Source of the DNA: Schmidtea nova
Taxonomy: Eukaryota
Length of the DNA: 64,000 nucleotides
Direction: 5' to 3'
NCBI GenBank assembly: GCA_044892505.1
Contig: CM097883.1
Location: 83,514,001 to 83,578,000, forward strand
In this document: positions 1 through 25,829 of the stretch, piece by piece
Layout of the letters: every line of letters starts with the position of its first letter
Numbering within the stretch: position 1 is the first letter of the stretch
Made by a program: the position numbers and the translations under genes
The notes under the pieces: generated by a model
Told to the model about the DNA's origin: nothing
The model's database searches: none
The model's input: the letters and a program-made list of their open reading frames with translations, nothing else

Positions 1-2
1 CA

Positions 3-164
3 GCAAAACAATATAAACAATGTTACATATGCGAAGACAGTGAAATCCAAATAATGTTTCTACCATGCGGACATTTTCGATTTTGTAAAAACTGTGCGAA
101 TAAGTGTGATGAGTGCCCCATGTGCAATTTCTCTGTAGCTGATAAAATTGTAGTTTATTTATAA
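3..164 (+). CDS. C-terminal IAP/BIRC-type RING finger (5'-partial; not in the ORF track)
   Basis: Frame 3 reads AKQYKQCYICEDSEIQIMFLPCGHFRFCKNCANKCDECPMCNFSVADKIVVYL*, matching the IAP RING pattern C-x2-C...FLPCGH..C..C.....CP.C ending a few residues before the stop. Confidence 0.85.
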   Translation, partial: AKQYKQCYICEDSEIQIMFLPCGHFRFCKNCANKCDECPMCNFSVADKIVVYL

Positions 165-636
165 TAAATATTTAGAGTGTTAATATATTGTATCGAATGA
201 CAAAGTCAAGGGAGCAATCAACAATGTTAATTAATTTTTGAGCTACTATCAAGTAGTCCGTTAAGCACCCATTGGGAGGTACCAGTTGATCAACCCACTC
301 GGGGTATATAGAAAGGGGCCAATCGCAAATGTTGGAAAGCTTTTGTGATGTGATTGATCACCACATCCCGCATTAGTAGACCAACGCGATCTTTTTGTAT
401 ATTTTGGTTGGGGAGAGAAATAGGGAAACCCTGATGAGGTAAGATGCGCGCAGAGAAAATAATAAAAATTGAATTATGACTGATCAGCGAAAGAATTAGT
501 AATAAAACAAAGAATCGAGGAATTATAGAGAAAAATAAGAGGTGCATAATCAGCTTGCATGAAATTGAGAGAACTCAGCTGAGAAATTGTAGTCGCTAGC
601 GAAGTTAAGAATTACGATTAACCGGTTAAGGAAAAG

Positions 637-880
637 TTATCAGCGGTTTGTCCCTTGAAACAAAGGGTTATTAGAATTTGTCCCTTGAAACAAAGGGTTA
701 TTAGAATTTGTCCCTTGAAACAAAGGGTTATCAGCGGTTTGTCCCTTGAAACAAAGGGTTATTAGAATTTGTCCCTTGAAACAAAGGGTTATCAGCGGTT
801 TGTCCCTTGAAACAAAGGGTTATTAGAATTTGTCCCTTGAAACAAAGGGTTATCAGCGGTTTGTCCCTTGAAACAAAGGG
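637..880 (+). repeat. Tandem array of 8 units of 30/31 bp (order A B B A B A B A), each with a CCCTT-GAAACA-AAGGG hairpin
   Basis: A = TTATCAGCGGTTTGTCCCTTGAAACAAAGGG; B = TTATTAGAATTTGTCCCTTGAAACAAAGGG. Confidence 0.97.
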
Positions 881-882
881 TT

Positions 883-1040
883 GAGGCCAAAGAGCCATAT
901 TGAATGACCTAGCTAGGCGTTATTGAGAGATATGATTTAAGGCCAATAGAGCCATTTGAGATAATAAGATATGAATTTGAGGCCATAAGAGCCATTTGAG
1001 ATAATTGATATTAATTAGAGGCCAAAGGAGCCAATAGGGA
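883..1040 (+). repeat. Four degenerate AGGCCA-x-AGAGCCA repeats in the element leader
   Basis: GAGGCCAAAGAGCCAT, AAGGCCAATAGAGCCAT, GAGGCCATAAGAGCCAT, GAGGCCAAAGGAGCCAA. Confidence 0.75.
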
Positions 1041-1053
1041 TATCCGGATATAT

Positions 1054-1270
1054 AGTAACGGAGGGAATATAGGCCAAGGGTTACAATTGTTGAGTAGCAA
1101 CGGAGGGAATATAGGCCCAGGGTTGCAATTATTTAAAATTAAAGGAAGATAGTAACGGAGGGAATATAAGCCCAGGGTTACAATCGTTTGAGTAGCAACG
1201 GAGGGAATATAGGCCCAGGGTTGCAAGTGATAAGAAATAACAACAGAGGGAATATAGGCCCAGAGTTGTG
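1054..1270 (+). repeat. Five spaced copies of AACGGAGGGAATATAGGCCCAGGGTT(A/G)CAA
   Basis: Copies begin near 1057, 1099, 1154, 1197 and 1242. Confidence 0.9.
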
Positions 1271-1817
1271 ATCGTCGACGATAATGAGAATAGTGCGCAC
1301 CGATAATAGAGAAATGCGAGTAAAGCTGATTATGCGACCTAAAATAATGCATGCAAGTAGAATTGAGAAATAGGAGCTGACCGGAAAGACCGGCAGAATT
1401 AATAATTAGAGGCTAGCAGAGAGAAAGATAAAGAGATGATAAAATAATAATCGAGTCAAATGACTCAGGGAATTAGAGCGTTCGAACGACAAATAAATTG
1501 GGAGACCGCGGGAAAAATAATTGATGTATTTTAATAACCGATAGATAATTGTTATGACTAAATAGATAATTGTGACTAGTATATAGATAATTTAAATAGA
1601 CTTAAATAAAGGGGAATCTGGGAATGGGGAAAAATAATAGAAACCCAGTAATGAGAAGTCCCGTAAAAAGGGAATAAAAGCGCAACGATAACAATAGAGT
1701 ATCGTTGAAGTGACATTTGTATTTTAGATAAATCAATCAAACCAAACCAAGCAACCAAGGAAGAAAAGAATCGGAACACGATAAGACAGGAAAATTGAGT
1801 ATACAAAAGTAATCCCG

Positions 1818-4800
1818 TTGAGAAAAGGAGAAAAGAGTGTCATAATAAAACCAGCAGAAAAGAATAAAGCTACCAAGAATAATAATCAGAAAGGCCTAAA
1901 AGGAAGTAAAGCAAGGCAGATAATAATACAAAAGTCGATTATCGAAAACGATAAATTATCAGTAACAAGCAACAGTTCAAGCAACAAAGAAAATCAAGCA
2001 GAACCCGAGAGAAACCCAATAAGTGAAATAGAAGTCGACAAAACCAACAACGATTATATAGAAGAAATAGAAGACGAAGTAGAACAAGAAACAGAAAGTG
2101 ACGATACCGATAACGATAGTAAAGCATCAGATAACGAATCAGCAAAAGAAACTGAGATCGACCGAAATTCGAGTGACGAACCTAACAGTGAACTAGAAAC
2201 AAGAGGAAACGAAAGTAAAATAACTACAGACAGCGGAATTGAAATGAGCGAACCCAGAGAAGAGATAAAAGACAAATTTTCCGGAGAACCGTTTAATGGA
2301 GATGCGAGTAAATTAGAAACTTTCTTAAAGGAATTTGGCATATTCGTGGAAGTATGCAAGTGGAAACCAGAAACAACTGTAAGCAGAATTCAGCTATATT
2401 TGAAAGATAGCGCATTAGATCTATATTTGGAAGCAAAAAATGGAACTAATCCACCTACAAGTTGGTCAGCGATAAAGGACTTTTTCCAACAAACCTTTGG
2501 AATAAACAAAGTATTGAATGAGGCATTCACGGAATTCTCAATGAGGAAACAAAAGATAAATGAATCGAATGCGGTATATGCAAGCGAATTAAAAAAGTTA
2601 GCAAAGTTGATTTTCAATCAAGACAGTCCAATAAATGAAGAGTTAATGGCAGCTATCTTTGTGGGAGGATTAAGAAGACCCGACATAAGAGCGCAAGTTG
2701 GATGTCAAGGGTGTAAAACTATTGACCAAGCATTAGAAACAGCTAATAGATTTGAACTACACATGATAGGAAATGATGGTAGAATCTATTTAGCTATGGA
2801 TACAGCACAAAACGAACAAGAAGTGAACCTGAATAACCACATTCCAAATTCACAACAATTAAACCGACCACCACCGCAACGAAGGAATGAAGGGAATAAA
2901 GTATCAAATTTCGGAAATCAAAGCAATTACAACCCCCAAGGACCAACGAAACAATGCAAAACATGTGGGAAATTGGGACATTGGCAACAAGAATGTTATC
3001 AGAACTTGAATTGTGGAAAATGTGGAGTAAAAGGGCATTCAGAGAGCAGATGTTACACAATAACCTGTTTTAATTGTGGACGACCTGGACACCTATCAAG
3101 AAATTGCGGACAAAGAAGCAATCAACGAGGAAACTGGCAGAATACCGGAAACCGACAAAACTATGGAAACCAACCAACTGGTGGAAACCGACAGAATTAT
3201 GGGAATCAGCCAAATAATGGAAACCAACCGGAATACGGAAACCAACCAAATAGTAATAATAATAACCAAAATAAAAATACCACTAAAGAGATACATCTAA
3301 TGCAAGAGGTTCAAAGATTGACGGAGCTGATAAACAATACAACCAGAGGAAATCCACAAACAGGTCAACAACAAATCAATATGATGAGAAAAATAGAAAG
3401 CGAAAACGAACGATTGAATCGGGAAAGTCAAGCACGACATGCTCAGGAATGGGCAAGAGTACAAAGAGAAGAGGAACAAAAACAGCAAGAAAGAGAACGA
3501 CAACCTCTAAGAATTAATATGATGAGAGCAACCAATCAAGCAAATACCCACGAGAAAGAGACTGTGCCAGAAATAAATCCAACAAACCTGAATCCAACCA
3601 ATAACGAAAGTCGAAAAGAAATAGTACCAGGAAGCGAAGAAACAGAAATAGAAAAGGAAGTGGAAACAGAGGCAAACCAGGAAGAGAAAAGAATGATTTG
3701 GAAAAAGGGAATGATGGTAATCCTGCCAAACGGTCATATGTTTCGATTCCAATATAACATAAAGGAAGAAGTAGGAACATTGTTCAACAAAGTGAATGAA
3801 ATGGCTCCAGGAGTAACGAAACTGCCCAGAGAAGCATTCCTAAAAATAGAAGGTGCACCAGAAGTAAAATTGAAACTAACGGATACATGGGAAAACATGG
3901 GAGTAGTAGAGACAAAAAGAAATGTGATGGTAATCAAGGAAATGGAACCGGAAGGAATTCCATCGCCAGTGCGTCACGAAACACGAATCAGTCGAATATT
4001 TAAAGGGAAAATGATACGAAGACGGTTGGGAGAAATAGACGAGTTAGAACGAAAAATGAGAAAGGTCGAAGTAGTAGACGACAAGAGTGAATCAACACAA
4101 AAAGCTATTAAAAGTGAAACAAGACCAACGGAAAATACACCAAGTGAAATCAACCAAATAAAACACATTAACATGTTGAGAGGCCAGGCAAAGAATTTTT
4201 CAGATGACGAAGAGGATAGTGACGTCAGTAGTCTAGCAGGGGACATGCTAAACGAACCGGAAATTGAAGACAAAAAGATAGAAGTAGTAAAGACACCAGA
4301 AACTATTCAAGTAAAAGAAGACGAGATCCAGAAATTACTAGATAATGCGCTAGAAGTAATATATAATGAGGAATTCATTGACAAGAAACACTATCGGAAA
4401 TTCATGAGAGCGATATTACAAATGAACTATAAAGAGTGGTTACCAGGCCGGGAAGTAGAAACACTAAGCCAATACGTAGGAAAATTATTAAAAGAACCAC
4501 TCCATGAATATATAATCCTAATAGAGATAAAAACATGCTTGCCAAGGATTTGGATCAAAACTCCACTCACGGAAGATATTTACCAATGGGTAGAAGACAG
4601 ATTAGGGAGCTCGTACAAGAACAAATTCCTCTATTCACAGAATGGACTAGTAAAGAAAAGGACGCATTTGATAGAAACAGGCATATGGCCAGGAGAGGTG
4701 ACAACATTATCGATATGCGATGATAAGAGAGAAGAGAACCTACAAGAAGTAGCAAAGGAAGCGAATACGTGTTTCGAGAAGAAGATAAAACCACGGTTAG

Positions 4801-7800
4801 AATATGAGAAAGGACGAATCTTACGAGGAAATCTAAATTCCATGATAGAACAAATCATCCCACAAATCAAAAAACATAGAAAGGAGTTAATGAGAAGCGA
4901 ATACGAAAGGTTGAAACGATGTATCGAGTGCATACGTGACACAAGTCACACGAGATGGTCACAGATCTCATACGGAAAAGTAGTTGCCAAAATGGGAAAA
5001 GCAATGTTCAGACAAGGGAAAATAACAGATCTAAAAATTTCAGTGGAATTGCCTAATGAGGATACCAAAGAAATTGAAGTGGTAGCAGATTGTACCATAA
5101 AAGAATTAGTAAATGTCATCAACGAGACCCTATTACAAAGAGAACCAGAAGAAGAATGGGAAGATGACATAATCATGAAATACAACGAACATGTATTATG
5201 GGATCACGATGAAAGACGGCTATATAAAATTGGTATATGGGATAATCACCAAACCATCCACGTTATCAGAATGGACGATACACCAAGAGAAACTGCTAAG
5301 GATGAGAAAAGAGAACGGGAACGACAAAAAGAAGTTGTGCATAAATTACAACAAATAGTAGACATTTATCGAAATTGGCGGATTTGGCCAGAATGGGAAG
5401 ATGTATTAGAAGAACTCAATCTCAACAGACGATTACGAACACCTGTAGAAAAACAATGGAACGAACGAGGAAAATGTTGGGAACCAAAAGCAGGCGAATA
5501 CGAAGAGGAATACGGAATAGGAATAGAAGACGATCACAAACCGGAAACCGGAAGAGTCTGTATGGTAACAAGAAAAGCCATGCCAGCAGATTTAGACGGA
5601 CCAGAAACAACAACCATGTGGTTGGAAAGAGAGAAACAAAAAACGGAAGAATTTGTCGAAATATTAAAAACCAATGCGCACGGCAAGAGAAAATTAGTAA
5701 AAGGTCTCGCAGATTTTTTCGTAGTTAACGGAGAAGACATAACCTGCCTGCGTAAAGTAGCAAAAGCAATCGCCGAATACAAAAGAGTTAACGAGTGGTG
5801 TCCAGAACAATTGGATCAAGTAATTAAAAAATGGAGAAACCAAGAATTCTCGCAGGAATCGCCACAGAAAGTACACCTAAGAATAGTATATCCGGACCAG
5901 GAAAAAGAAGAGTTTTGGGTAGGGATAGCGGAGAAAGTTCGAGACATTAAAAAGAAATTGAGATATGAACCACCATTCCATTTACAACACCAAGGACGAT
6001 CATTAGATAACAGCTTAGAAATTGGAATAACGCCAGCGCAATTAGATATCGCAAATACATTGACAGTAGCAGCAATAGCAGGTCAACCATTGAAATTGAA
6101 AGAGGAAAAGAAACCAAAAGGAAGTATGAGTACGCCGAGCCCAATGAAATCGGTAATGACTCCAGGAACAAGCTCAGAACAAGCTAGAACAACACCAAGA
6201 GAGACAAGAGAAAGAACACCACCAGAACCATACGATGTAGACGAAATTTTTACAGATAGCGATGATATGTTAGAGGAGTTAATAGAGCTAACAAAAGAGA
6301 AAGATGATAACATTTTCGAAAGAATCCAAGAATTACCAACAGCAATACCGGTAACCAACACCGAAGATGAAGTCGAACAAGAAATAATCATAGAGGAAGT
6401 AAATGAAATAGCAGAAGAGGAAGCAAGGAGGGCAAATGTAGAAAATGTACAATTCACACAAGAAATGGAAAGATGGTTAGAAGAAAGAGCCAATGAACCA
6501 AGAGACGTCACAGAAGAAACTGGACGAGAAACAAGATTAGTAGAAACGGGCACGACAATGGATAAACGACCTAGAGGTAGACCCAAGATGGATCCAGCAA
6601 ATGTAGTTATAAAATCAAGAGAGGAAAAAAGACGGGATCAATGGGATTTGTGTTTAAAGAAACTAAATAAAATAGCCGAAACGAAAGAAAAAGAAACAAC
6701 ACAAACATACCAAGGCGAAGAATGGATATCAAAGACGTTAATGGAAATACTAGCAATAATCGATCCGGAATTAAAGAAATGGTGGAGAATAAACGAAATA
6801 AGCGAAAGGGCGAAATCACTGCATAGCGCCATCGCACCAATCCTACCAGAACTAATAAAAGAGAAGACAAGGTCAAACCACCTAGATTGGCAAGGAACCA
6901 CGATGTTGATAAAGAAGTTAACGGAAGGAGCAGAGACGGATAACAAATATTTAATAGCTATGGCATACACCATTTACAATCTGCTGACACTGAGTAGAGG
7001 TCGACTGAAACCCACAGCACTTGAAAGACATATAAAGAATACAGCCAAAATTATAGAGAAGGAAATAGAACCGTACATCATCAGTAAAGGAGGATGGGAA
7101 ACATTCACAAAAACGAACCAAAAGAAAAACCAAGCCAAAAATATGAAAAGGAAATTCGAAGAGATATTGGGAGAATTGGAAAAGGAAAAGTCGGGAACAG
7201 GAAACGGGAAATCATCACTAAACTTGAGTTCTATCATTATGATGATGTTAATATGGATGATTAGTACTGACGGAGCAACAGCATTTGAAGTATTCGATTG
7301 TGATCAAATGGCATTAGGTGAGAAATATTCACTACGAGGGACAGAACAATGTAAGGACGCAACCCCAACGGAGCTAAAAACATTAAAAAAGAGACAATTA
7401 TACCACGTATATCAGGAAGCTGAACTGATAAGAACAATGGTCAGAGAATGCAAAGTTTATAAAACCAGATTTGCTTTTTATTGTGGGCACCGCCATTATT
7501 CAGCAATCGTGATGCCAGGAACGGAAAGAGAATCGGTAATGCTGCAAGGAGAAGACTGTGAAAAATTATTCAAACATGGAGAAGTAGAGACTAGAGATAG
7601 AGTAAAGATAAGAGGAAAAACGGGAGTGATATTACAACAAACATATTATGTAGCAGGAGCTATTACGGGAGGAGAAGGGTACTGCCAAGGAGCAACATAT
7701 CCAATATTCGGAGTAGCAGCAACAAACCTAGTGGTAATAGATACCTATACAGTAGAATTAAAAACGTACGAGGCATTCTTCGATCCAACAACGGGAGAAA

Positions 7801-10800
7801 TGAAAACCCTGCCCATGTGCAAAATTGAGTCAAACACTTGCCAAACCGGTATGTCAACCTTAACATACCAGATACGAGGAAAGGAATGTCAACTACAACT
7901 GTTAAAGGAAGCAGAATTCGATGAGATACAAGGGAAAACCTTCCAAGAGGAAGAAGAAGACGAGGCAGCAAGAGGAAAAATACTTCAAGACACCGTACGG
8001 GGAGAGAAAAAGATTGAAACCCGAACACAAGAAAAACAAATTAAAATGAGAAATACACCAACGGTACTAATTACCTCAGATGCAGATATCGGAATGAGGT
8101 TTGTAAAAGGAAAAACAGCCTTGAAATGCGGAGTAGCCATGTTGGAAACCAACTACCCCGGCATTTTTGTATCAAAACAAGAAGTACCTAGTGCGAAACG
8201 CAAAGTACACACGAACGATGTTAAATTACACCTGTACATGAACAATAAAATGGATTTTCTATTCCATAGAGGACAAGCGTCACTACAAAAAGTGTATTAC
8301 GATTTAATTAACAACGATTGCATATTAAATAGGGAAATATTAAAGACAAAATTAGCAGTAGCAATCACAAACCCGGATAGTGCAATGCCATTATTACCAT
8401 TAAGAGAAGGTCATTTTGGAAGGGTAGTCGGAGAGGTCATGTACGTATACATATGTAAAAAGACGAACGCAAAAGTAGCGACAATGACAAAACTACAACC
8501 AAGTCAGTGTACTAACGAACTAGAAATCGAATATAAAGGGAAAGTAAGATATGTGCAACCAGTGACAAGAATCATAAATCCAGTAAGCTTCGAACCAAAC
8601 CCTTTCAATTGCAGCAACGCATATGGACCACTATACCAAAAACCAGACGGGAATTGGGTTATGTTTCCGTCAAGAACAGAGGTACCAGCACCAAGAGAAT
8701 TTGAATTAATGCAACTATCAAAAGGAAGAAAATTTAAAGACGTAGATGTAAGCAATATGGGATTCTATAGTGCAAAGGATTTAGAAGCAGCAAGACAAAA
8801 CATACTATTTCCGGCAAGACGAGAAGCGGTGTTATCCAGTATTGTAACAATAACAGGAGGAACAAATTACCAAGGTGGACCAAATTACGAATTATTATTG
8901 TCACCGGCCCACTTTAAGAAGGCAACGGAAAACATGATGAAAGCGATGTGGGGAAGATTTTTAATATTTGGACAAATGATGGCAGGAATACTTGGTGTTA
9001 TACTAATTATACAAATAATACGGGTAATAATAACGCAAATGTTAGCCTGTTTTGACATCTATAAACGAGAAAAGAAAGTAAATTGGAAATTGGTGGTAGG
9101 ATTCTTACCATTTTTGGCTAAAACAATGGTATTACACGGTCATTCAAAAGATATTCACCGAATAAAGAGACTCCTAAAAATACTGGCAAAAATGAAAGGA
9201 ACCGATGAAGAGGTGGGACGAAAATTTAAAAAGATAATGAATAACGAGCAAGCAAGACAACAACTAAAGAAAGAGAGAAAAGGACTATGGGAAAGAATGA
9301 AAGGGTACAGAACCCAAGACGATTCCAGTGACGACGATGATGATGATAACGAAGGAGGTCAAGTATTTAAAAATCAAGTACCACAGTACGTCGAAAAGAA
9401 TCCAGCGGAAATGTGGAAGTGTTACGCACCCCCACCAACCATGTACCAAGAACCAACACCAGGGATGAGACAAAATACAATGCAAATGATGCCGATGACA
9501 AACATATATCCTATGATACCAGAAGACTATAGAACGAGACGGTGCAGAAGCGTAGATCCGCAAGGAGACTCACATACAATTGCAGTAATGTCATCAAACA
9601 CCGGTCCAGTATTAACTACAACAATCGAGATTAACGGAAGAGAAATTGAAGCGATGATTGATACAGGAGCAAATATCTCAGCAATAGATATAAAATGGAT
9701 ACCACAAGAACAAAGACGGGATATCGAGAGAACCAACGTTCATGTAATAGCATGCAGTAAAGAAGTAGTAGAAGTTGCCGGAAGATGGTGGGTAAAGATA
9801 AAACATCAAAACACAGAAATCGAAACGTACGTAGCAGTAATACCAGCACTAAGCGTACCATGCATTATAGGCACAGATTTAATGCCAGCATTATTTAAAG
9901 AAATAGTTATTGACCTGGGAACAATGAGATTGAAGGATAGGACAGGACAGATATGCGCAATAGAAGCAAAAGTAACAAGTTCGAAACAAATAATCGTACC
10001 AGCACGGAGAGAGAAAATATGTTTCGTAAAAATAGATCCTACAATAGAAGGTGACATGATCTTTGAACCCAGTAAAAGATTTGAAAAGAGAAAGTCGTTG
10101 CCAATGGCAAGAGGATTAGTGAGTGCGAATGACAACGGAGAAATCCCAATAAATGTAGTAAATTTCGATGAAGAGGATAAAATAATTTATGAAAATGAAA
10201 GACTAGGTAAACTAACTCCAATGATAGATATCGAAATACCAATAAAAGAAGGAGTAAAAGAGGAGGAACCCACCTGGAACATTGATAGCCAACTACTAAA
10301 TGAGGATCAAAAGAAACAGCTAGAAAGGTTACTGATGGAATATAAAGACATATTCGCAGCATCCGATTTAGATCTAGGGACATGCGACGTCACACTACAT
10401 ACGATTCCACTAACAGACGAAACGCCTATTGCGTTAAGACCATACAAGTTAGCTGAAGCGCAAAAATCAGTAGCAGAAGCAGAAGTACAGAAAATGCTAG
10501 ACGCAGAAGTAATTGAACCAAGCTGCTCACCGTGGCAATTCCCAGTTGTAATGGTGAAAAAGAAAGACGGAACACAACGGTTTTGTATTGATTATCGGAG
10601 ATTAAATGCGGTAACAAAAAGGGATACATACCCATTACCAGACATCAACGAGATGTTATTGACATTACAAGGAGCGGCATATTTTACATCATTGGATTTG
10701 AAAAGCGGATACTGGCAAATTAAAATGAAGGAGGAAGACAAAGAGAAAACTGCTTTCACTATCGGAAGAGACTTGTACCAATTTAGGAAAATGCCATTTG

Positions 10801-17774: not shown

Positions 17775-19157
17775 ATGAATACAGAAGGAAAAGCCGAAGA
17801 GCGGATAATCGAAATTTTGAGAGCCGAGAACAGGAAATGGAGTCAGAGACTCACTTGTGTAAATTGTAAAAACATAATATTGAAACCAAGACAAACCCTA
17901 TGCGGATGCAGAGTATGTACCAAATGCATACACGAGTTAAGTATGAAAAGACCACCAGAATGTCCAGAATGCAAAGAAGGACAAATAAAATTCGAAGAAA
18001 CCGGACCAGATAGAGCAACTCAGAGAGAAATCATGAACACGAAAACCGAATGTATAAATCAATCATGTATATGGCAAGGACAAATACGCGATCTCGAGAA
18101 CCATCTGGAGAACTGCGAAGAGAAGAGAACTGAATGTAACAAATGCCAACAAAAAATAACTATAAAGAATAAAGAGCAGCACAAAGATGAATGTAAAGAA
18201 GAGGAAAGTCTATGCGAATATTGTGGAACTCGAGAAACGAGGAGAAAGATCGAAGAAGAACACCTGAATGTAAAAGAGGAGAAAGTATGTAGACAATATG
18301 TAGGAATATGTTCAAACGAATGCGAGATAACGGTAGAAGTAAAATTACAAGAACATTGGAAAGTGTGCACGGAGAAACCAAGGGAATGTCCTTATAACAA
18401 ACAGGGATGTATGGAGAAAAGAACGCAAAAAACCATGAAACAACATCTGGAGGAAGCATTGCTAAAGCATGCGGAAATGACAAACGAAGCAACAAAAGAA
18501 ACCGAACAAACAATCAAAAAATTAGAAAGAGAAATAGAGTCACACAAGATAATGGTAAACCTACTGTTGGAAACCAGAGAGCAATTCGAACTAACACGAG
18601 AAAAGATGGAGGAAAAGATAAAAGCTATCGAAGAACTGGCTAAAGGAATGAAAATCCAGTACAACAAACTCACCCAGGATACCGAGGAAAAGTTACCAAT
18701 CGCACCCTATGTGTGGAAAGTGACAGATTTTAGAAACAAATTAACAGAGGCCAGAAATATGACGAAAACAGCAGTAATAAGCCCACCATTTTATTTATGG
18801 AGAAACGGAGCTAAAGTGAGATTGAAGCTATACCCAAATGGAGACGGAAGAGGACGAGGAACACATGTGTCAATATTTTTCTCGCTATGTAAAGGAGAAT
18901 ACGACGACCTAGTAGAATGGCCCTTGAAAGTAGGAGTCATTGTAAGAATCAGAAGTGTAACAAAACCAGTAGAAAAATTCTTTGAGACAGAGAAACATGC
19001 GAGTACGAGCGAGAAACCAACCACAGAATGTGGATTAGCAGCGAGAGAACCGATGTTTATAACGAAAGAAAGCCTATGGGAACGATTATATGCAGACACC
19101 CTATACATAGAAATGGAAAGGAATGAGAAAGCGGATAGAAAAGGATGGTTGACGTAA
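17775..19157 (+). CDS. TRAF homolog (RING, TRAF zinc fingers, coiled coil, MATH), intronless, element-borne
   Basis: RING CVNC...CGCRVC..C...CPEC; TRAF Zn fingers; MATH VWKVTDF...SPPFY...LYPNGDGRGRGTHVSIFFSLCKGEYDDLVEWP. Confidence 0.93.
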   Translation: MNTEGKAEERIIEILRAENRKWSQRLTCVNCKNIILKPRQTLCGCRVCTKCIHELSMKRPPECPECKEGQIKFEETGPDRATQREIMNTKTECINQSCIWQGQIRDLENHLENCEEKRTECNKCQQKITIKNKEQHKDECKEEESLCEYCGTRETRRKIEEEHLNVKEEKVCRQYVGICSNECEITVEVKLQEHWKVCTEKPRECPYNKQGCMEKRTQKTMKQHLEEALLKHAEMTNEATKETEQTIKKLEREIESHKIMVNLLLETREQFELTREKMEEKIKAIEELAKGMKIQYNKLTQDTEEKLPIAPYVWKVTDFRNKLTEARNMTKTAVISPPFYLWRNGAKVRLKLYPNGDGRGRGTHVSIFFSLCKGEYDDLVEWPLKVGVIVRIRSVTKPVEKFFETEKHASTSEKPTTECGLAAREPMFITKESLWERLYADTLYIEMERNEKADRKGWLT

Positions 19158-19271: not shown

Positions 19272-20333
19272 ATGGGAAATATCGAGGTATGCTTACAGGA
19301 AATTACGATGCATCAAGCAGAAGCGATTAGCGATCATCTAGAACAGATTGAAATATGGGTCAATGCATATTATGGAAAGCAAGAGGAGATAGAGAGACAA
19401 GCCGAATTATTAAAAGAAGCGGAAAGATCAAGTCAAAGAAGTCGAGAAAAAATAGAAGAAGTATACAAAATGCTACAACAACAAAAGGAATATTACCAGA
19501 GAATGATGAAAGAGCGACGAGAGGAAAGAGACAGACAGCAGATGGAAGCTGAACACAAGATGTATTCGATTACAGAACAAGCAAGATACTGGAAGAAAGA
19601 AGCGAAAGAATCTTACGAAAAAGCTAGAGAAATAATAGAAAGGACAGCTTATAGTGATGACTGGAAGTTATATAAAGAGATCGATGAACTAAAAGACGAG
19701 TTAGAACAAAAAATCAACCAGGAAGTGTTAAATAAAAGATGGAATACAAAAAGACAGCAATTTATCCGCGAACAAGCAAAGAAAATTAAAGGACTAACCT
19801 ATCAAGTTCAAAGAATGGGAGAAGAACTAGCTAATCAAGAACAACTGAAAACTATGCTCACCGGAATATGGAATCAGAAAGAAGAAGAGATGAAGAGAGA
19901 TATAAATGGTTATCAAGGGGTGATCACTCAAAAGAAAATAGAGCTAAAAAGAACCAGGGAAAGGTTAAAGGAAGAGAAACAAAGTTACGAGGAAAATTTA
20001 ACGAATTTGATGAAAGAAAACGAAGAATTGAAACAGAAACGAGTAACAGTATCAGTAATACCCAAAGAAGCAAGTATAACGGCAGCCGTAACAAAAATGA
20101 TAAAAGAAGACGAACAAAAGACAAAAGTAATCGAATTAGAGAAACAAATAGAAACATTAACAGAACAAGCAAATTACCTAGAATATTTGCTAGACGAGGA
20201 GATCCAGATATCTCACATGTATCGAGATGAAGTCGAAATGTGGAGGAGCAGGGTTGTTTGGATACCACTCCCCACAAACCAAGTAGAGCCTCAGGACGAA
20301 GGTTTCTATGAACCAAATGAGACGATTGTGTAA
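19272..20333 (+). CDS. Accessory ORF C, 353 aa long coiled-coil protein
   Basis: E/K/Q/R-rich heptads over most of the length; inside the element. Confidence 0.8.
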   Translation: MGNIEVCLQEITMHQAEAISDHLEQIEIWVNAYYGKQEEIERQAELLKEAERSSQRSREKIEEVYKMLQQQKEYYQRMMKERREERDRQQMEAEHKMYSITEQARYWKKEAKESYEKAREIIERTAYSDDWKLYKEIDELKDELEQKINQEVLNKRWNTKRQQFIREQAKKIKGLTYQVQRMGEELANQEQLKTMLTGIWNQKEEEMKRDINGYQGVITQKKIELKRTRERLKEEKQSYEENLTNLMKENEELKQKRVTVSVIPKEASITAAVTKMIKEDEQKTKVIELEKQIETLTEQANYLEYLLDEEIQISHMYRDEVEMWRSRVVWIPLPTNQVEPQDEGFYEPNETIV

Positions 20334-20414
20334 ATAAAGCGGAAAATATATTTTTGTAAATAATTGTATGAAATGTAGTGTCAAATTGTATTGACCTATC
20401 TGTAAAGAAACAGT

Positions 20415-20987
20415 ATGAAAAAGCTCAGAATACCGATATTCCTATACCTAATAACAATCACCCTACAAAGAGAAGATCTTCAACTCACAGAGAAGGAGCT
20501 ACGAGCCCTACCCGAGAAAACCTATCAAGAACTAGATAAACTAATCAGCGAAGCAACACAAGAAATCACCCAACTTCAACAGATAACATCAGACAACCCA
20601 AACGATGAAAAATTTCAACAGGTCCTATATGAACATCGAATCAAATTGAAAACAATCAGAAAAACCCTAAAAGAAGGTCGAGAACCCATAAAAAGCTTAG
20701 CCCAAGCAGAGATAGAATATCAAGAAAAATGGATCATCGCAATTATAATAATCCTTGCACTCAGCGTGACCATTATCGCGATCACAATCCTCATAACATC
20801 ATACCGAGTGAAGATCCTAAAACAAAAACAAGTCATCCTGAATCGAACAACAATACAAGACAGCAGAACCCAAAAGCGAATGGGAAAACACCTAAACCGA
20901 ATCCAAAGCCACTACGAACTACGAACAATCAGCGAAAGAACCCCAATCCAATCCAATACCAATCATGAAATCAAAGAGCTTGTGTAA
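20415..20987 (+). CDS. Accessory ORF D, 190 aa predicted single-pass membrane protein
   Basis: Hydrophobic N-terminus IPIFLYLITITL, helical region, TM WIIAIIIILALSVTIIAITILIT, basic tail. Confidence 0.75.
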   Translation: MKKLRIPIFLYLITITLQREDLQLTEKELRALPEKTYQELDKLISEATQEITQLQQITSDNPNDEKFQQVLYEHRIKLKTIRKTLKEGREPIKSLAQAEIEYQEKWIIAIIIILALSVTIIAITILITSYRVKILKQKQVILNRTTIQDSRTQKRMGKHLNRIQSHYELRTISERTPIQSNTNHEIKELV

Positions 20988-21192: not shown

Positions 21193-22524
21193 TGTTGGGC
21201 CAGCCAAATAGAGGGAACAGTGAAATAAAAGTAGATTAATTAAAACAAAAAAGAGAAAAATAAGGTAAAAAGGGGAATATTTATTTATTAAAAGAAAGGA
21301 ATAATATAGTAAAAATATAGAATAACTAAGTACAAGCTATAAATAAAAATAAATGAATTTATAGATATTAACGGGCCCAGGAGACATCTAAAAACAAATA
21401 AAATACAAATAATAATAATTAAAACCAAATAAAAGTACTTGTTATTGAATAATTGTTTTTGAAACCCGGACCTCCAAGGAAGAATACAATCTAAAAAATA
21501 AAAATTAATTAGAATCAAAAACAATAATTAAAAACCACCATGAAACTGGCCAAACCTGATTGGTCAGTCTAGACACGACTGATCAGTATAAATACTGATC
21601 AGATTTTTCATAAAATCAGACTTTGGTAGACTAGACGTTTGACTAGAGTGAGACTTTAGTAGACTTTGTTAGACTGAAATTTAGACTTTAACTAAAAATT
21701 CGCATTAGATTGCACATTGCCCCGACGACGATCACCGTTTAGACCGATTTTGATCAATAAATTTTCAGAATTCAATTGAGGTATTTTTGGTACATTATTT
21801 GATGTTGTATTCATATGTCATTATCATATTATAATATATTATTCATCTCATTATGATTTACGTTATATTTAAACTATTTAAACTATCATATTAATCTCGC
21901 GCCGTTGGGAGCTTTAGGTTCCCAAGGTGTTCGTCCGTGGCGTGGTGCTCGAGGGCTCCACACACGGTAAAGTAATAAATAACAAAGCATAATTTTATTA
22001 GTGATGGTGGAGATTTGCACATGGGACACCCAACAAATCCGGGGAATTATTTTCCGATCATTTTAGCTACAGAGGGGACGAAAATTTTTTGATAACGCTT
22101 AAAGATATGAAAGAATTTTTTTTTTAACCGTGAGGAGGCACAAATTGTTCACCCTCCCCAGAGCACAATGGCTAGATAAACGTCTAATAAACCTTAGAAA
22201 AATTAGGTCGACCGCATTTGGTACAAAAGAGCGTTTTTCGAATAAGCTAGGGATACATGACGGGAGAGAGCTTCCGTTTTGAGGTATCAATATTTTGAAA
22301 ATCCAAGCAGACAAATCACCATTTTTTCGTCTATAATATTGATCGTAAACAGATAAAGCTAAGTAGATACGAGAGTAATGTATACGTAACGAACGACAGT
22401 TTCTCTTGATTTCAGCTAAGGGGTAGGCAAATAATAAAGATATCACGATGAGAGATAACATTTACTATGATTAATTATTGATGTAAATTGTAACTATTAT
22501 AAAATTCAGCATCGTTTTGGAATC

Positions 22525-23001
22525 ATGACTAAGCATAGATACACTATCAAAAAACGACAAGAACGAGCCCGAGTTAGCCCATTAAAGCCGGCTCCTTTCG
22601 AGATTTTACAGCAAATCCATCAAAAGATGTGGGCATGGCGCCGAGAGCTCGAAACCGCCTGTCCATTTACAGTATGGGACCATCCACGGCACCACGTCTG
22701 GTACCGGGGATGCGCTAGTTGGCCAATCATTCCAGATGAGGAATTCGAATCATGGCACGCCGCCTGGTTCATCATGATGTTGGACAAAGGAGGATTCCCG
22801 AAATGTGTGATTTATTGGGGGTTCATTCCAGCCTCTACCTTCAAGGAATTGGGGTTCAAGTTCAATACAGCCATACGACCCCTTCGAGAAGCTGAGAGAA
22901 TCCGCTTCCAGCAAGCCTCCTCCAATAGCACGGGAATCCACACAAATTTGCAAATTAAATCGATATTTTCGTATCGGGGAAAAACGACCGGAGATGGATA
23001 A
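22525..23001 (+). CDS. LTR-embedded ORF 1, 158 aa Trp-rich protein of unknown function
   Basis: ATG-initiated, GC-richer than flanks, open for 158 codons in AT-rich context. Confidence 0.55.
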   Translation: MTKHRYTIKKRQERARVSPLKPAPFEILQQIHQKMWAWRRELETACPFTVWDHPRHHVWYRGCASWPIIPDEEFESWHAAWFIMMLDKGGFPKCVIYWGFIPASTFKELGFKFNTAIRPLREAERIRFQQASSNSTGIHTNLQIKSIFSYRGKTTGDG

Positions 23002-23319
23002 TTGAATAAATGGCCACCTATTTTTGAATTTAATAAATGTTTTAAAGAAGTCTGAAGTGTCTCATTTTGTTAATAGTGTTGTCATGTAGATTTAGTATTG
23101 TAGTTGTTATAGTCATTAGGAAATTCATTTATTAATACAAAATTAGTTTAATAAATCTTTTGAGTCTTCAATGGTTAGATAGTTAAATACTTCTGTAAAG
23201 AACTCGATAATTAAAAACATTAGTATACATCTCGTTTAATAATAATAAAGAGTAGACTAAATAAAATAACATTGTTGATAGGTCCTCCAGCGAATTTATC
23301 GTTATAATATTCAGACAAC

Positions 23320-23904
23320 ATGCCGACTACAGAAAATTCCAAGAAAATCATGGGACAAATCCAAGAAAGGAAGTTGAGGGACCAGCAGCGACAGATCAAG
23401 CGACTCACGGTCGCCAATGATGAATTGAGAGCGAAGTGGTTCTCACCCGGACAAATGAAGGACCAGTCGAAAAAACTTGAGCGAGTGCAGGAAGCACTGG
23501 CCACAACCAAATTGGAACTAGATGCCGTCCAGCGAGAACTCCGAAATTGCCTGAACGCAGTAACAAGAAGTTACATCGACTCCGAATTGCGAGCGCTAAT
23601 CCGGCCGATCACGGCTCAGCGCTGGATACAATGCACTCACCAAGATGTCGCTTGCGGGACAGAAGATGATATCATCATGGCACCCACTCTTACAACGGAA
23701 GATTTGCCTATTTTTCTCAGTGATCCCCCGAGAATAATAGCGTCAGCACCGGTCATAAACCAACAGCTTCGAAAACATCGAATGGGATCGCGACAGCGCC
23801 GTCGTCGCCGAGAATTTGCAAAGCGCCTGGATGAACGAATCTACCACCTGAACTCCTTAACCGAAGCAGAGTTAATCCAGGAGATTAGCCTGGAGTTTGA
23901 ATAG
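23320..23904 (+). CDS. LTR-embedded ORF 2, 194 aa coiled coil plus Arg-rich motif
   Basis: ATG after TTCAG-ACAAC; RQRRRRREFAKR near the C-terminus; AATAAA-rich signal downstream (~23996). Confidence 0.62.
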   Translation: MPTTENSKKIMGQIQERKLRDQQRQIKRLTVANDELRAKWFSPGQMKDQSKKLERVQEALATTKLELDAVQRELRNCLNAVTRSYIDSELRALIRPITAQRWIQCTHQDVACGTEDDIIMAPTLTTEDLPIFLSDPPRIIASAPVINQQLRKHRMGSRQRRRRREFAKRLDERIYHLNSLTEAELIQEISLEFE

Positions 23905-25829
23905 GAAAACCTCAATGTAAAATAACAACCTGTCTTTATTATTTTAATAAAAGTATTACTGTGTAAAATTTTTCTCTCATCGTGTGAATTCACTAAATAA
24001 AATAAAATAACAATAGCTAAATCCTAGAAGTAAAAAATCGCAGCCGCATTTTTCTCAAACCGACCGTTTCTACGCAGGAGCTGATTAATTACCTTGTAGA
24101 TCAGTTAAGGACAGTGAAATTGAGGAAAAGCGTGTGATAGATCATAAGGATGTGTAGTATAAAATTCAGTAGGAAGCGAACATCCATAGAATGTAAATGC
24201 GTAAGACCTTCTATCGGCAGCAAGGACCCGAGGGAAGATAAATGGGGAGTAGTTTTGGCAACAAAGCTCACCTGCCCATCATTTTTCCACCACCGTATGC
24301 AGTACCAACTTGGCTAGTAGGGAATAGTCAAGGGCATACGCGTGTAGTAGTCATGTTATGTATGGTTATGGGCGTGGAATCCCTAGTATACGTACTCATC
24401 AATAGTCGTTCAATTAATGATTAACTATTTATTTGAATTACTTAAAACCCACCCATAATCCCAACAATATATTCAACTCAAAAAATAGAATAGTCTCCGT
24501 TCTTTGCCCTTTTGAACTTTTTAGTTTTATTGTTACGGTCCGTAACAAGTAACTAAATTTAATTTTAAATCGTTTTAAAATCATTGTGGAATAATATTTT
24601 TCATTCGTTAGATGGCGAAACAGTACTTAATTTATACAAGTTAAATGTAAAATCAGAACAAGCAGTGGCAAATTTAACAATTAATTCTTTTCATCCATTT
24701 ATTAATGTAAATCATTGTTTTCTTCAATGAACTTTATTAAGTCAGACATGATAATAGATTAAAAGGTGGGAGTAGTGCTGTTTGTATCCTGCTAAAGCGA
24801 CCAGTTAGACAGGTATGATACTTTATTATTTTCTTATGTAGTCTTTTCATGTTTCAAGTAAAAACAAATTATAACAAAACTGTTGATTCAAGTTATTTTA
24901 TAATGTTGGGTTATTAATGAGTAGTCGATGGTACCTGACTCCTGTGTTCTCTTTTTATCACTACAAGAAATCAGACCCAACACCATAAATTTTATTTTTG
25001 ATTCAATACAATACTGCTAATCACAGAAAGTTACAATTGTTCTACAATCTGCGATAGGGTAGAACACCCAATGGGATATCTCCCTTTCTGATACGCAGGA
25101 ATTGATGGATCGATACTTTATAACTTTTAATTACCGTTTCCGTTGCCTTTTCTATGTTCCAATCACTCGCTCGACTCTTCGAGATTTTCTTCGACAAACT
25201 GGCTTCGACCAACTGGATTCGACCAACTGGCGAGTACGGCAATTTTGACTTAACTTTTATAGTGATTTTTCGATTGGTCCTGTCACGTCTTAATGTATCA
25301 GTCAATTGGTAAATTAACTGGAAGCTGCTGCTAAGTGAATTTTCCCGGGACCTTCTGTAATTAATCAAATTATTAATAAATTTATTGATGTCCCGAGTTT
25401 CCCACGTAGCTCGGGTTTCATATTAGGCAATTAATTATTTTAATTAATTTGTATTTTCTTAATATTTCTTTCTTTGGGTCCCTTTTTAATTGTATACACG
25501 CATATTTGAACTCGTCTCATCATTTGGCATCCTCCCATACCAGTTTCCCCTTCTCAATATTTATTTTGAATTTTTATAAATTTTTAATTAATGTTTGCAT
25601 ATTGATCATTATTTTTCCTATTTTCGTATTTTTATCTATTTGCACATAGTTTTTGTGCTTTTTGTGCTTTTTAACTTTTTATTTCAGCCTATTCAGGCAA
25701 CCCTAAAAAATAAAATCAAATAAATAATTCATGGCACGTCAGCTAGTAAATAAGTAATTTTTGGCACGCGCACTCAAAAAGGTTTGCCACCACTCGTCTA
25801 GATATTATAATATTTTATTAATTATGTAT

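What the first reader, a model, noticed from the sequence alone, without database searches (positions are those of the whole stretch)
1..24466. Giant enveloped Ty3/gypsy element carrying a coherent apoptosis/TNF-NF-kB manipulation kit
Seen: one element of at least 24.5 kb contains an IAP-type RING, a Bcl-2-like domain, a full TRAF, ankyrin repeats, ubiquitin-like domains and a receptor-like FN3 membrane protein around an intact Gag-Env-Pol. Known: TRAF2 and cIAP act together at TNF receptors, and large DNA viruses carry vBcl-2, IAP and IkB-like ankyrin genes; retroelements normally do not. As I recall, planarian Burro elements were reported with BCL/BIR/MATH/ankyrin domains, so the family may be known. 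Inference: this complete gene set plus an envelope points to an infectious retrovirus-like agent that protects its host cell (e.g. neoblast or germline) from death. The intact 15.4-kb ORF suggests recent activity.
Basis: partly seen in the sequence, partly recalled or inferred. Interest (0 to 1): 0.95.

Follow-up and report, generated by a model that had tools for sequence, protein, structure and literature searches.

The report
Giant Burro-type enveloped gypsy retroelement
Window 1-24466 is the larger part of an unbroken giant retrovirus-like element of the already published planarian "Burro" type, which carries cell-death and ubiquitin-pathway genes, so it is a striking but known kind of thing.

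Summary
Window 1-24466 is one retroelement that runs off the window's 5' edge. It holds one unbroken 5127-codon reading frame (1818-17201) in the order Gag, spacer, Env, protease, RT, RNase H, integrase, ankyrin blocks, C-terminal membrane module. Four short-spaced downstream cistrons follow, one a complete TRAF. A 3.3-kb 3' LTR is proposed at 21193-24466. The last 53 codons of an upstream ORF are an IAP-type RING.

- **Significant hits:** Gag, class III Env in frame, Pol, ankyrin, TRAF and the IAP-type RING.
- **Below threshold:** the Bcl-2-like, ubiquitin-like and FN3-like calls. In each case the expected family is the top or only hit.

The kind is published: GYPSM1/Burro (2007, 2018), with env in frame and apoptosis and ubiquitin domains described in 2019. 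This copy differs from those descriptions in layout.

New here, all inferred:
- a polyprotein threaded through the membrane, with two lumenal modules;
- an operon-like accessory block with a fixed 8-nt motif after each stop and a splice-acceptor-like YAG before each ATG.

Infectivity, cell protection and the NF-kB reading are untested.

The parts
1..164 (+). 3' end (53 codons plus stop) of an upstream accessory ORF cut by the window start. It is a C-terminal RING finger of the IAP type.
   Evidence: zf-C3HC4_3 E 4.9e-13. Best PDB sequence matches are the XIAP, cIAP1/2 and livin RINGs at E about 3e-11. Sequence read.
165..1784 (+). Non-coding leader between the upstream ORF and ORF1. It holds tandem arrays at 647-882 (30-nt unit, about 8 copies), 928-1033, about 1050-1268 and 1541-1592.
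   Evidence: It has no similarity to the rest of the window, so no 5' LTR lies in the window. The 30-nt array folds no better than shuffles, z -0.74.
1818..17201 (+). ORF1, a 5127-codon unbroken polyprotein frame. It is open from 1785, and the first ATG is at 2244.
2244..3122 (+). Gag: capsid-like region and three CCHC zinc knuckles (aa 380-430).
   Evidence: Retrotrans_gag E 4e-4 and zf-CCHC E 2.8e-9. Three knuckles counted. Weak gag similarity to P0014 and P0015.
3681..6092 (+). Spacer with four putative ubiquitin-like modules: 3681-3962, 4491-4733, 5007-5285 and 5853-6092.
   Evidence: All below threshold. Ubiquitin_4 E 0.033 for module 3. A profile of the four modules has a redesigned ubiquitin as top PDB hit, E 0.22. 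The Foldseek list is dominated by ubiquitin-like folds, best E 0.14, from a low-confidence model. One relative exists, P0027, at 30% identity over aa 710-1228.
6690..7142 (+). Putative Bcl-2-like helical domain ending in a BH2-like motif.
   Evidence: Below threshold. Pfam Bcl-2 is the top hit, E 0.15, on the C-terminal 30 profile positions. The only PDB sequence hit is Bcl-xL, E 1.3, at its BH2 region. Predicted all-helical, with Bcl-xL entries in the Foldseek list.
7224..9053 (+). Env: internal signal-like hydrophobic segment (aa 1803-1822), class III-type fusion glycoprotein ectodomain, and transmembrane anchor (aa 2387-2412).
   Evidence: PF24664 Monjiviricetes_fusion E 3.8e-70. Hydropathy. 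14 invariant Cys columns shared with P0013-P0015. No R-x-K/R-R site.
9618..12503 (+). Pol: protease (9618-9890), reverse transcriptase (10554-11030), RNase H (11217-11606) and integrase (11931-12503).
   Evidence: RVP 1.8e-8, RVT_1 7.7e-38, RT_RNaseH 2.7e-38, Integrase_H2C2 8e-22, rve 1.1e-10. The D-T-G, Y-I-D-D and HHCC motifs are present.
13308..14747 (+). Two ankyrin-repeat blocks, 13308-13760 and 14289-14747.
   Evidence: Ank_2 E 2.4e-15. Block 2 is related to block 1, E 9e-6.
15261..17201 (+). C-terminal membrane module of ORF1. It has a signal-like segment (15261-15317), four Cys-bearing repeats of about 85 aa that are possibly FN3-like (15324-16733), a transmembrane segment (16959-17015) and a 61-aa tail.
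   Evidence: Hydropathy. Internal repeats. The only PDB hits of the repeat profile are tenascin FN3, E 0.28-0.72. The AlphaFold model is unusable.
17327..17683 (+). Accessory cistron 1, a 118-aa coiled-coil-like protein.
   Evidence: no family
17775..19157 (+). Accessory cistron 2, a complete TRAF-like protein: RING, TRAF zinc fingers, coiled coil and MATH.
   Evidence: MATH_2 1.3e-19 and zf-TRAF 7.8e-5. PDB matches are TRAF5/3/2 MATH at about 2e-21 and TRAF6/2/5 RING plus zinc fingers at aa 22-151. Its MATH is 32% identical to the in-frame MATH of P0027.
19272..20333 (+). Accessory cistron 3, a 353-aa coiled-coil-like protein.
   Evidence: no family
20415..20987 (+). Accessory cistron 4, a 190-aa small membrane protein with a hydrophobic N-terminus and one transmembrane segment at aa 107-131.
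21193..24466 (+). Proposed 3' LTR of 3274 bp, with 7-nt inverted termini TGTTGGG...CCCAACA. It encloses ORFs 22525-23001 and 23320-23904. ATAT follows at 24467-24470.
   Evidence: Its first roughly 10 nt and last 288 nt (76% identity) match the ends of the solo LTR at 39836-41562. Composition changes at about 24400.
39836..41562 (+). Solo LTR of a related family, flanked by the 4-bp direct repeat GTAC on both sides. It is not part of the element but calibrates its LTR ends.
   Evidence: No Burro-like coding remnant lies nearby.

Best explanation
This is the larger part of a young copy of a Burro-type giant Ty3/gypsy (Metaviridae, errantivirus-like) LTR retroelement. Nothing in it is broken within the window. 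The host has innexins and is very probably a triclad planarian.

**Shown**
- One 5127-codon frame reads Gag (three CCHC knuckles), a roughly 1370-aa spacer, a class III-type fusion glycoprotein, protease, RT, RNase H, integrase, two ankyrin blocks and a C-terminal membrane module.
- An IAP-type RING ORF lies upstream.
- Four closely spaced cistrons lie downstream: a coiled-coil protein, a full TRAF, a second coiled-coil protein and a small membrane protein.
- A 3' LTR follows.

**Inferred mechanism**
1. The polyprotein is threaded through the ER membrane. Gag and the spacer stay cytosolic. A signal-like segment just before Env puts the ectodomain in the lumen, and the Env anchor returns the chain to the cytosol for PR-RT-RH-IN-Ank. 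A second signal-like segment and anchor do the same for the repeat module. Host signal peptidase and the element's protease would cut the chain.
2. The downstream cistrons would be expressed from processed RNAs. Each stop codon is followed 15-21 nt later by the same motif, and each ATG has a YAG 1-3 nt upstream.
3. The cargo (IAP-like, TRAF-like, probably Bcl-2-like and ubiquitin-like, ankyrin) would act on the host's cell-death and TRAF/ubiquitin signalling, as analogous genes of large DNA viruses do.

The cargo function is an inference from domain families only.
For: **Identity and architecture**
-.
- The published description of Burro matches point by point: giant ORF1, env in frame between gag and pol, MATH_TRAF, BIR, BCL2-like, ankyrin and Ubi2/SUMO-like domains, tandem repeats and accessory ORFs (PMC6431247).
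- Gag-Env-Pol order with a class III Env is also reported for flatworm errantiviruses (PMC13524379).

**Relatives**
- Three polyproteins, P0013-P0015, share env-PR-RT-RH-IN in one frame at 38-44% identity. They share 14 invariant Env cysteine columns with ORF1.
- P0027 shares the spacer at 30% identity and carries an in-frame MATH that is 32% identical to this element's TRAF MATH.

**Youth or constraint**
- No stop in 5127 codons, against 9.1 expected per 1% neutral divergence.

**Topology**
- Hydrophobic segments lie at aa 1803-1822, 2387-2412, 4482-4500 and 5048-5066.
- The same pattern (env start, then two segments after integrase) occurs in P0013-P0015.

**Cistron signals**
- Seven of the eleven plus-strand TGTAAAT sites in 1-21192 lie in the 616 nt of the five spacers after ORF1 and the four cistrons (Fisher p 5e-9). 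An eighth straddles a stop codon.
- YAG lies 1-3 nt before all four ATGs, against a background of 0.10 per ATG, so p is about 1e-4.

**LTR ends**
-.
Against: - The 5' LTR, primer-binding site, target-site duplication and the start of the upstream ORF lie outside the window. Completeness and age by LTR divergence are therefore unknown.
- The host was not identified by name. The innexin's best match is an unnamed protein at 90% identity.
- No reference Burro sequence could be compared.
- The Bcl-2-like, ubiquitin-like and FN3-like calls are all below significance, and both structure models failed.
- No dUTPase-like or BIR domain was detected in ORF1.
- ORF1 has no ATG in its first 142 codons, so its true start is unknown.
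- No RNA or protein data were available. Splicing, processing, topology and any cargo function are all untested.
- The motif statistics were noticed first and tested afterwards.
Confidence: 0.75

Rival explanations
1. The cargo domains serve the element's own replication cycle rather than control of host cell death. Possible roles are particle assembly and budding through ubiquitin-like and RING/TRAF scaffolds, trafficking or nuclear entry through the ankyrin repeats, and membrane remodelling through the Bcl-2-like tail-anchored domain.
For: - The ubiquitin-like modules and the Bcl-2-like domain lie in the same chain as Gag, directly before Env.
- No classical late-domain motif was found in ORF1, so another budding route would be needed.
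- MATH sits in frame inside the polyprotein in the relative P0027.
Against: - The IAP-type RING and the TRAF are closest to the signalling and anti-death proteins XIAP, cIAP and TRAF2/3/5/6.
- P0013-P0015 have the gag-env-pol core without any of these domains, so the cargo is not needed for the core cycle.
Confidence: 0.2
2. The cargo consists of transduced host gene fragments carried as neutral passengers. It looks intact only because this copy is very young.
For: - Intactness alone cannot separate youth from selection.
- The cargo set differs between relatives.
- No copy-to-copy comparison was made.
Against: - The spacer region and the MATH domain are kept at 30-32% protein identity in the distant relative P0027. 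That depth of divergence would have destroyed a neutral passenger.
- The TRAF has no close cellular source in 5.8 billion proteins; the best matches are 23-30% identical.
- The four cistrons share regular flanking signals.
Confidence: 0.1
3. The 24.5-kb unit is not one element. It would be an assembly chimera, or nested insertions of unrelated sequences beside an ordinary gypsy element.
For: - The window has masked or gap stretches elsewhere.
- The proposed LTR differs in composition from the body.
- The 5' end is missing.
Against: - There is no N in 1-24466.
- Gag, Env, Pol, the ankyrin blocks and the membrane module lie in one unbroken frame.
- The whole body shares a strong A-over-T skew on one strand up to about 20.8 kb.
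- The same unusual layout is published for Burro and is present in independent relatives.
Confidence: 0.03

Closest known systems
Burro / GYPSM1 giant gypsy-like LTR retrotransposons of Schmidtea mediterranea, and the Burro-like element of Girardia (Dugesia) tigrina (Jurka 2007; Grohme et al. 2018; Arkhipova and Yushenova 2019, PMC6431247)
   Same: - Giant size and one ORF1 of about 4.9-5.1 thousand codons.
- Gag with CCHC knuckles: three here, as reported for S. mediterranea.
- Env in frame between gag and pol.
- PR-RT-RH-IN order.
- MATH/TRAF, IAP-related, BCL2-like, ubiquitin-like and ankyrin domains.
- Tandem repeat arrays and accessory ORFs.
- ORF1 length (5127 aa) and the absence of MATH from ORF1 resemble the G. 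tigrina element (5140 aa).
   Different: - The TRAF here is a complete RING, zinc-finger, coiled-coil and MATH protein in a separate downstream cistron. In Burro1 it is an in-frame MATH, and in G. tigrina it is an upstream accessory ORF.
- The upstream ORF here ends in an IAP-type RING.
- No BIR and no dUTPase-like domain were detected in ORF1.
- The passages I read do not mention a C-terminal repeat-bearing membrane module or the cistron signals.
- No direct sequence comparison with reference Burro elements was possible.
Gag-Env-Pol errantivirus-like Ty3/gypsy elements with herpesvirus gB-type (class III) Env in Platyhelminthes, Nematoda and Bryozoa (PMC13524379)
   Same: The gene order gag-env-pol, and an Env of the class III fusogen kind, here matched by the Pfam family for Monjiviricetes fusion glycoproteins.
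   Different: - That paper writes of ORFs arranged as GAG-ENV-POL. Here Env is fused in frame into one polyprotein.
- This element also carries about 3000 extra codons of cargo and four extra cistrons.
Anti-death and signalling genes of large DNA viruses: baculovirus and entomopoxvirus IAPs, viral Bcl-2 homologues and poxvirus ankyrin proteins (named from general knowledge)
   Same: The combination of IAP-type RING, Bcl-2-like and ankyrin-repeat proteins in one mobile genome.
   Different: - Those are DNA viruses with separate genes. Here the carrier is a reverse-transcribing element, and part of the set is fused into the Gag-Pol chain.
- No functional test exists here.
Membrane-threaded polyproteins of flavi- and pestiviruses (named from general knowledge, as an analogy for the mechanism only)
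   Same: Internal signal and anchor segments alternate cytosolic and lumenal parts of one chain. Host signal peptidase and a viral protease share the cutting.
   Different: There is no homology. Those are RNA viruses without reverse transcription, and the topology here is inferred from hydropathy only.

Membership tests
Ty3/gypsy (Metaviridae) LTR retroelement | Pol domain order protease, RT, RNase H, integrase | tested here: met
   Pfam hits in that order in one frame. Catalytic motifs present.
Ty3/gypsy (Metaviridae) LTR retroelement | Gag with capsid-like domain and CCHC knuckles | tested here: met
   Retrotrans_gag E 4e-4, below the cut-off. zf-CCHC E 2.8e-9, three knuckles.
Ty3/gypsy (Metaviridae) LTR retroelement | Two LTRs with TG...CA ends and a short target-site duplication | tested here: inconclusive
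   Only the 3' LTR is proposed (21193-24466, TGTTGGG...CCCAACA). Its ends match a solo LTR that has a 4-bp GTAC duplication. The 5' LTR is outside the window.
Burro family | Giant internal region and a single ORF1 of roughly 5000 codons | tested here: met
   At least 21.2 kb of internal sequence in the window. ORF1 has 5127 codons. Compare PMC6431247.
Burro family | env in frame between gag and pol | tested here: met
   PF24664 at ORF1 aa about 1807-2416, between the CCHC knuckles and RVP.
Burro family | Apoptosis and ubiquitin-related accessory domains (MATH/TRAF, BIR/IAP, BCL2-like, Ubi2/SUMO-like, ankyrin) | tested here: inconclusive
   Met for MATH/TRAF, ankyrin and the IAP-type RING. BIR was not seen in the window. 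The Bcl-2-like and ubiquitin-like calls are below threshold.
Burro family | Sequence similarity to reference Burro1-4 / GYPSM1 | not testable with these tools
   No reference sequence is held by any tool.
Burro family | Host is a dugesiid planarian | tested here: inconclusive
   The host has an innexin gene. Its best match is an unnamed protein at 90% identity, and there is no exact record.
Class III viral fusion glycoproteins (Monjiviricetes / gB-like) | Homology of the ectodomain, a signal segment and a C-terminal anchor | tested here: met
   PF24664 E 3.8e-70 over profile positions 6-579 of 653. Hydrophobic segments at both ends. No PDB sequence match. The fold itself was not tested.
TRAF family (ORF 17775-19157) | N-terminal RING, TRAF zinc fingers, coiled coil, C-terminal MATH | tested here: met
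   PDB matches to TRAF6/2/5 RING plus zinc fingers at aa 22-151 and to TRAF5/3/2 MATH at aa 311-446. Pfam zf-TRAF and MATH_2.
IAP family (upstream ORF) | C-terminal RING of the IAP type | tested here: met
IAP family (upstream ORF) | At least one BIR domain | not testable with these tools
   The rest of the ORF lies upstream of the window.
Bcl-2 family (ORF1 aa about 1625-1775) | Helical bundle with BH motifs | tested here: inconclusive
   Pfam Bcl-2 E 0.15. Bcl-xL is the only PDB hit, E 1.3, over its BH2 region. The model has pLDDT up to about 55 in this stretch only. No hit in 1.84 billion representatives.
Bcl-2 family (ORF1 aa about 1625-1775) | C-terminal hydrophobic anchor | tested here: met
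   A hydrophobic segment at aa 1803-1822 follows the domain. It doubles as the Env signal-like segment.
Fibronectin type III repeats (ORF1 aa 4503-4972) | FN3 beta-sandwich repeats | tested here: inconclusive
   Four repeats are real: E 1e-5 pairwise, with 7 invariant columns. No Pfam FN3 hit at E up to 10. The profile hits only tenascin FN3, E 0.28-0.72. The model is unusable.

The most novel reading that the evidence does not exclude
Burro-type elements would be retrovirus-like agents that make one polyprotein threaded through the membrane, with two lumenal glycoprotein modules. These are a class III fusogen between Gag and Pol and a second, repeat-bearing (FN3-like) module at the C-terminus, which is conserved in topology across the clade. 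Their accessory genes would be expressed from an operon-like block. A fixed gene-end motif follows each stop, and a splice acceptor lies directly in front of each start codon, possibly used by flatworm spliced-leader trans-splicing. As far as I read, neither feature is described for any reverse-transcribing element.
Probability: 0.3. Interest if true: 0.6.

Novelty: new member of a known kind. Interest (0 to 1): 0.4.

Why it matters
Burro-type elements are the largest known LTR retroelements. They are the only reverse-transcribing elements reported to carry a set of cell-death and ubiquitin-pathway genes like that of large DNA viruses.

An unbroken copy gives clean gene models for every part. 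These include a complete TRAF and a second membrane module.

It also yields two hypotheses that can be tested with existing RNA and proteome data. One is how an Env placed in the middle of Gag-Pol can reach the ER lumen. The other is how the extra genes are expressed.

The family and its cargo have been in the literature since 2007-2019. The finding therefore adds detail rather than a new kind of thing.

Tried and rejected
- **Structure prediction.** I modelled ORF1 aa 611-1810 (with the one relative as alignment) and aa 3928-5127 (single sequence). Both gave pLDDT 31-33. The second model was not searched. The first gave only sub-threshold PDB matches, and its BFVD matches were meaningless, with rmsd 25-70 Å.
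- **PDB sequence searches.** The spacer and Env gave nothing.
- **Profile comparison.** The four ubiquitin-like modules against the window's own ubiquitin-family ORF gave probability 0.7%.
- **Pfam on the reported dUTPase-like region.** A scan at E up to 10 between protease and RT found nothing.
- **Host identification.** The innexin ORF has no exact record and only unnamed homologues.
- **5' LTR.** I searched for it inside the window and found none.
- **Second Burro copy.** No coding remnant exists in the window. There is only a solo LTR and an unrelated gypsy pol.
- **RNA searches.** Rfam and tRNA scans of the window found nothing. The 30-nt leader array is not a better-than-random RNA fold.
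- **Short motifs in ORF1.** No 2A-like, late-domain or ubiquitin-type Gly-Gly ends were found.
- **Literature.** Grohme et al. 2018 is not held in the library.

Full report
**1. What is in the window**

Window 1-24466 holds no N. On the plus strand it carries one ORF of 5127 codons at 1818-17201. Mononucleotide shuffles of that stretch hold about 363 stops, and its other two forward frames hold 285 and 564. The frame is therefore real.

Pfam places the domains in this order:
- a weak Retrotrans_gag match and three CCHC knuckles;
- the viral fusion glycoprotein family PF24664 (E 3.8e-70);
- retroviral protease, RT, RNase H, and the integrase zinc and core domains;
- ankyrin repeats.

The D-T-G, Y-I-D-D and HHCC signatures are present. 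A second ankyrin block is related to the first.

The first 164 bases of the window are the end of another ORF. Its 53 residues are a RING finger whose best solved relatives are the RINGs of XIAP, cIAP1/2 and livin. The element therefore continues beyond the window's 5' edge.

Between that ORF and ORF1 lies a 1.6-kb leader with several tandem arrays.

**2. Downstream genes and the 3' end**

Four ORFs follow ORF1 on the same strand, separated by spacers of 81-125 nt:
- 17327-17683, coiled-coil-like;
- 17775-19157;
- 19272-20333, coiled-coil-like;
- 20415-20987, with one transmembrane segment.

The second ORF is a complete TRAF. Its N-terminus matches the RING plus zinc-finger region of TRAF6/2/5, and its C-terminus matches the MATH domain of TRAF5/3/2 at about 2e-21.

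The last 288 nt are 76% identical to 41284-41562, and the similarity stops exactly there.

That second sequence is a solo LTR at 39836-41562, flanked on both sides by GTAC. It starts with the same bases as window 21193.

I therefore propose a 3' LTR at 21193-24466, with 7-nt inverted ends, followed by ATAT. The start is less certain than the end. The 7-mer alone would occur by chance in a stretch of this size about one time in five (my estimate).

No part of 1-1817 matches anything else in the window. The 5' LTR lies outside it.

**3. The weaker domain calls**

None of the three calls below reaches significance. In each case the expected family is nonetheless the top or only hit.

| Call | Region | Evidence |
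|---|---|---|
| Bcl-2-like | ORF1 aa about 1625-1775 | Pfam Bcl-2 is the top hit, E 0.15. The only PDB sequence hit at E up to 10 is Bcl-xL, aligned over its BH2 region. |
| Ubiquitin-like | four modules between Gag and that domain | Module 3 has Ubiquitin_4 as top Pfam hit, E 0.033. A profile of all four has a redesigned ubiquitin as top PDB hit, E 0.22. |
| FN3-like | ORF1 aa 4503-4972 | A profile of the four C-terminal repeats hits only tenascin FN3 domains, E 0.28-0.72. |

The AlphaFold model of the spacer is poor, with mean pLDDT 31. Its PDB Foldseek list consists almost wholly of ubiquitin-like folds and Bcl-xL, best E 0.14.

A search of 1.84 billion representative proteins with the 1200-aa spacer found one relative and no cellular Bcl-2 protein. 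I count all three calls as probable, not shown. Published profile comparisons report BCL2-like and Ubi2/SUMO-like motifs in Burro elements.

**4. Relatives**

*ORF1-sized relatives.* Among proteins of comparable length, three (P0013, P0014, P0015) carry Env, protease, RT, RNase H and integrase in one chain. They are 38-44% identical to ORF1 over that core.
- All but one of the Env cysteines fall in 14 invariant columns.
- They have no ankyrin, MATH, RING or Bcl-2 hit. They do have an extra aspartyl-protease-like domain after the integrase.
- The gag-env-pol core is therefore older than the cell-death cargo.

*The spacer's one relative.* P0027 (882 aa) matches ORF1 aa 710-1228 and 1253-1323 at about 30% identity. 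Between those two stretches it carries an in-frame MATH domain that is 32% identical to the MATH of this element's TRAF.
- That is the arrangement published for S. mediterranea Burro1.
- The same module thus occurs in frame in one lineage and as a free, complete TRAF gene in this one.
- Conservation at this depth argues against the cargo being a neutral passenger.

*The TRAF.* It has no close cellular counterpart; the best matches are 23-30% identical.

**5. How it probably works**

The retroelement identity is shown by domain content and order. The rest of this section is inference.

*(a) Topology.* Hydrophobic segments lie at aa 1803-1822, 2387-2412, 4482-4500 and 5048-5066.
- The first segment sits directly after the Bcl-2-like domain and at the start of the Env match.
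- Read as signal, anchor, signal, anchor, the segments place Gag, the spacer, Pol and the ankyrin blocks in the cytosol. Env and the repeat module fall in the ER lumen, which is what each part needs.
- P0013-P0015 show the same pattern, although their C-terminal modules are not similar in sequence.
- No 2A-like motif and no dibasic cleavage site in Env were found.

*(b) Expression of the four cistrons.*
- In each of the four spacers that precede a cistron, the motif TGTAAAT(A) starts 15-21 nt after the stop codon.
- Counting also the spacer between the last cistron and the LTR, seven of the eleven plus-strand TGTAAAT sites in 1-21192 lie in 616 nt of spacer (Fisher p 5e-9). An eighth straddles a stop codon.
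- Every ATG has a YAG ending 1-3 nt upstream, against a background of 0.10 per ATG.
- This reads as a gene-end signal plus a splice acceptor. The acceptor could serve subgenomic splicing or spliced-leader trans-splicing, which flatworms use (titles and abstracts listed).
- I noticed the pattern first and tested it afterwards, so the p-values are generous.

*(c) Cargo.* The domain families point to the host's cell-death and TRAF/ubiquitin signalling. Planarians are reported to have TRAF2/3/6, XIAP and TAK1/p38/JNK components.

**6. Age**

About 5.9% of the possible point changes in ORF1 make a stop. That gives about 9 new stops per 1% neutral divergence. An open frame therefore means under roughly 0.3% neutral divergence from a working progenitor, or ongoing selection. 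LTR dating was impossible.

**7. Comparison with what is known**

The family is published:
- GYPSM1 (Jurka 2007) and Burro1-4 (Grohme et al. 2018).
- A domain-level description in Arkhipova and Yushenova 2019 lists Gag, MATH_TRAF, Ubi2/SUMO-like, BCL2-like, env in frame ('first case'), PR, dUTPase-like, RT, RH, IN, BIR, ankyrin, tandem repeats and accessory ORFs. It already suggests that the elements are proviruses meddling with apoptosis and ubiquitination.
- Gag-Env-Pol order with class III Env in flatworms is also described.
- BURRO1 is called highly abundant and active, with intestine-enriched RNA.

This copy differs from those descriptions in four ways:
- a complete TRAF as a downstream cistron;
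- an IAP-type RING ORF upstream;
- no BIR or dUTPase-like hit in ORF1;
- a C-terminal membrane module.

Its ORF1 length and its lack of an in-frame MATH recall the G. tigrina element. Its three knuckles recall S. mediterranea.

I could not compare it with reference sequences or name the host. It may be one of the already named Burro subfamilies. I therefore file it as a new member of a known kind.

**8. Steps left out, and a slip**

- I fetched no DNA of other copies or relatives of the element and made no cluster look-ups of its relatives.
- Because of that, I made no copy census, dN/dS estimate, 5' LTR search or LTR dating.
- I neither filled nor looked up any N stretch.
The element has no break within the window, so there is none to count.

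Noticed in passing
window 17202-21192: The four accessory cistrons have regular flanks. TGTAAAT(A) starts 15-21 nt after each stop codon, and a YAG ends 1-3 nt before each ATG. The layout resembles an operon resolved by RNA processing.
   Followed up: partly
window 1785-2243: ORF1 is open for 153 codons upstream of its first ATG (2244). By the stop frequency of shuffled sequence this is very unlikely by chance. The real start, whether non-AUG or supplied by splicing, is unknown.
   Followed up: partly
window 647-1268 and 1541-1592: Several different tandem arrays lie in the leader between the upstream RING ORF and ORF1. The 30-nt unit contains a small palindrome, but the array folds no better than shuffles (z -0.74).
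   Followed up: partly
window 22525-23001 and 23320-23904: Two ORFs (158 and 194 aa) lie inside the proposed 3' LTR, in a stretch richer in G+C than the element body. The second has an arginine-rich stretch near its end. Neither has a Pfam family, and whether they are genes is open.
   Followed up: partly
window 39836-41562: A solo LTR of a related family with a perfect 4-bp GTAC duplication. Only its first bases and its last 288 nt resemble the element's LTR.
   Followed up: yes
window about 30883-34934: A second, unrelated small Ty3/gypsy element. It has a DUF7041 ORF and an RNase H-integrase ORF, with pol 31% identical to ORF1. It is bounded by 125-nt direct repeats that are 90% identical.
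   Followed up: partly
window 44929-46098: An innexin ORF (Pfam E 3.8e-47), presumably a host gene. The best database match is an unnamed protein at 90% identity, so the host could not be named.
   Followed up: partly
window 51111-53120 and 55329-55880 (minus strand): An integrase-core fragment lies between 99-nt direct repeats that are 97% identical. A Tc5/pogo-type transposase DNA-binding ORF is also present. The region is a transposon-rich neighbourhood.
   Followed up: no
window 60830-61606: An ORF with a ubiquitin-family start and a Paf67 (eIF3L-like) segment. It may be part of a host gene.
   Followed up: no
window 28668-29500 and 61600-64000: An 8-9-nt microsatellite and a roughly 300-nt satellite, both interrupted by N runs. 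There are 13 N runs and 2575 N in the window, and all were left untouched.
   Followed up: no
proteins P0013, P0014, P0015: The distant relatives carry an extra DDI1-type aspartyl-protease-like domain after the integrase, and P0014 has repeated protease hits. They carry none of the cell-death cargo.
   Followed up: partly
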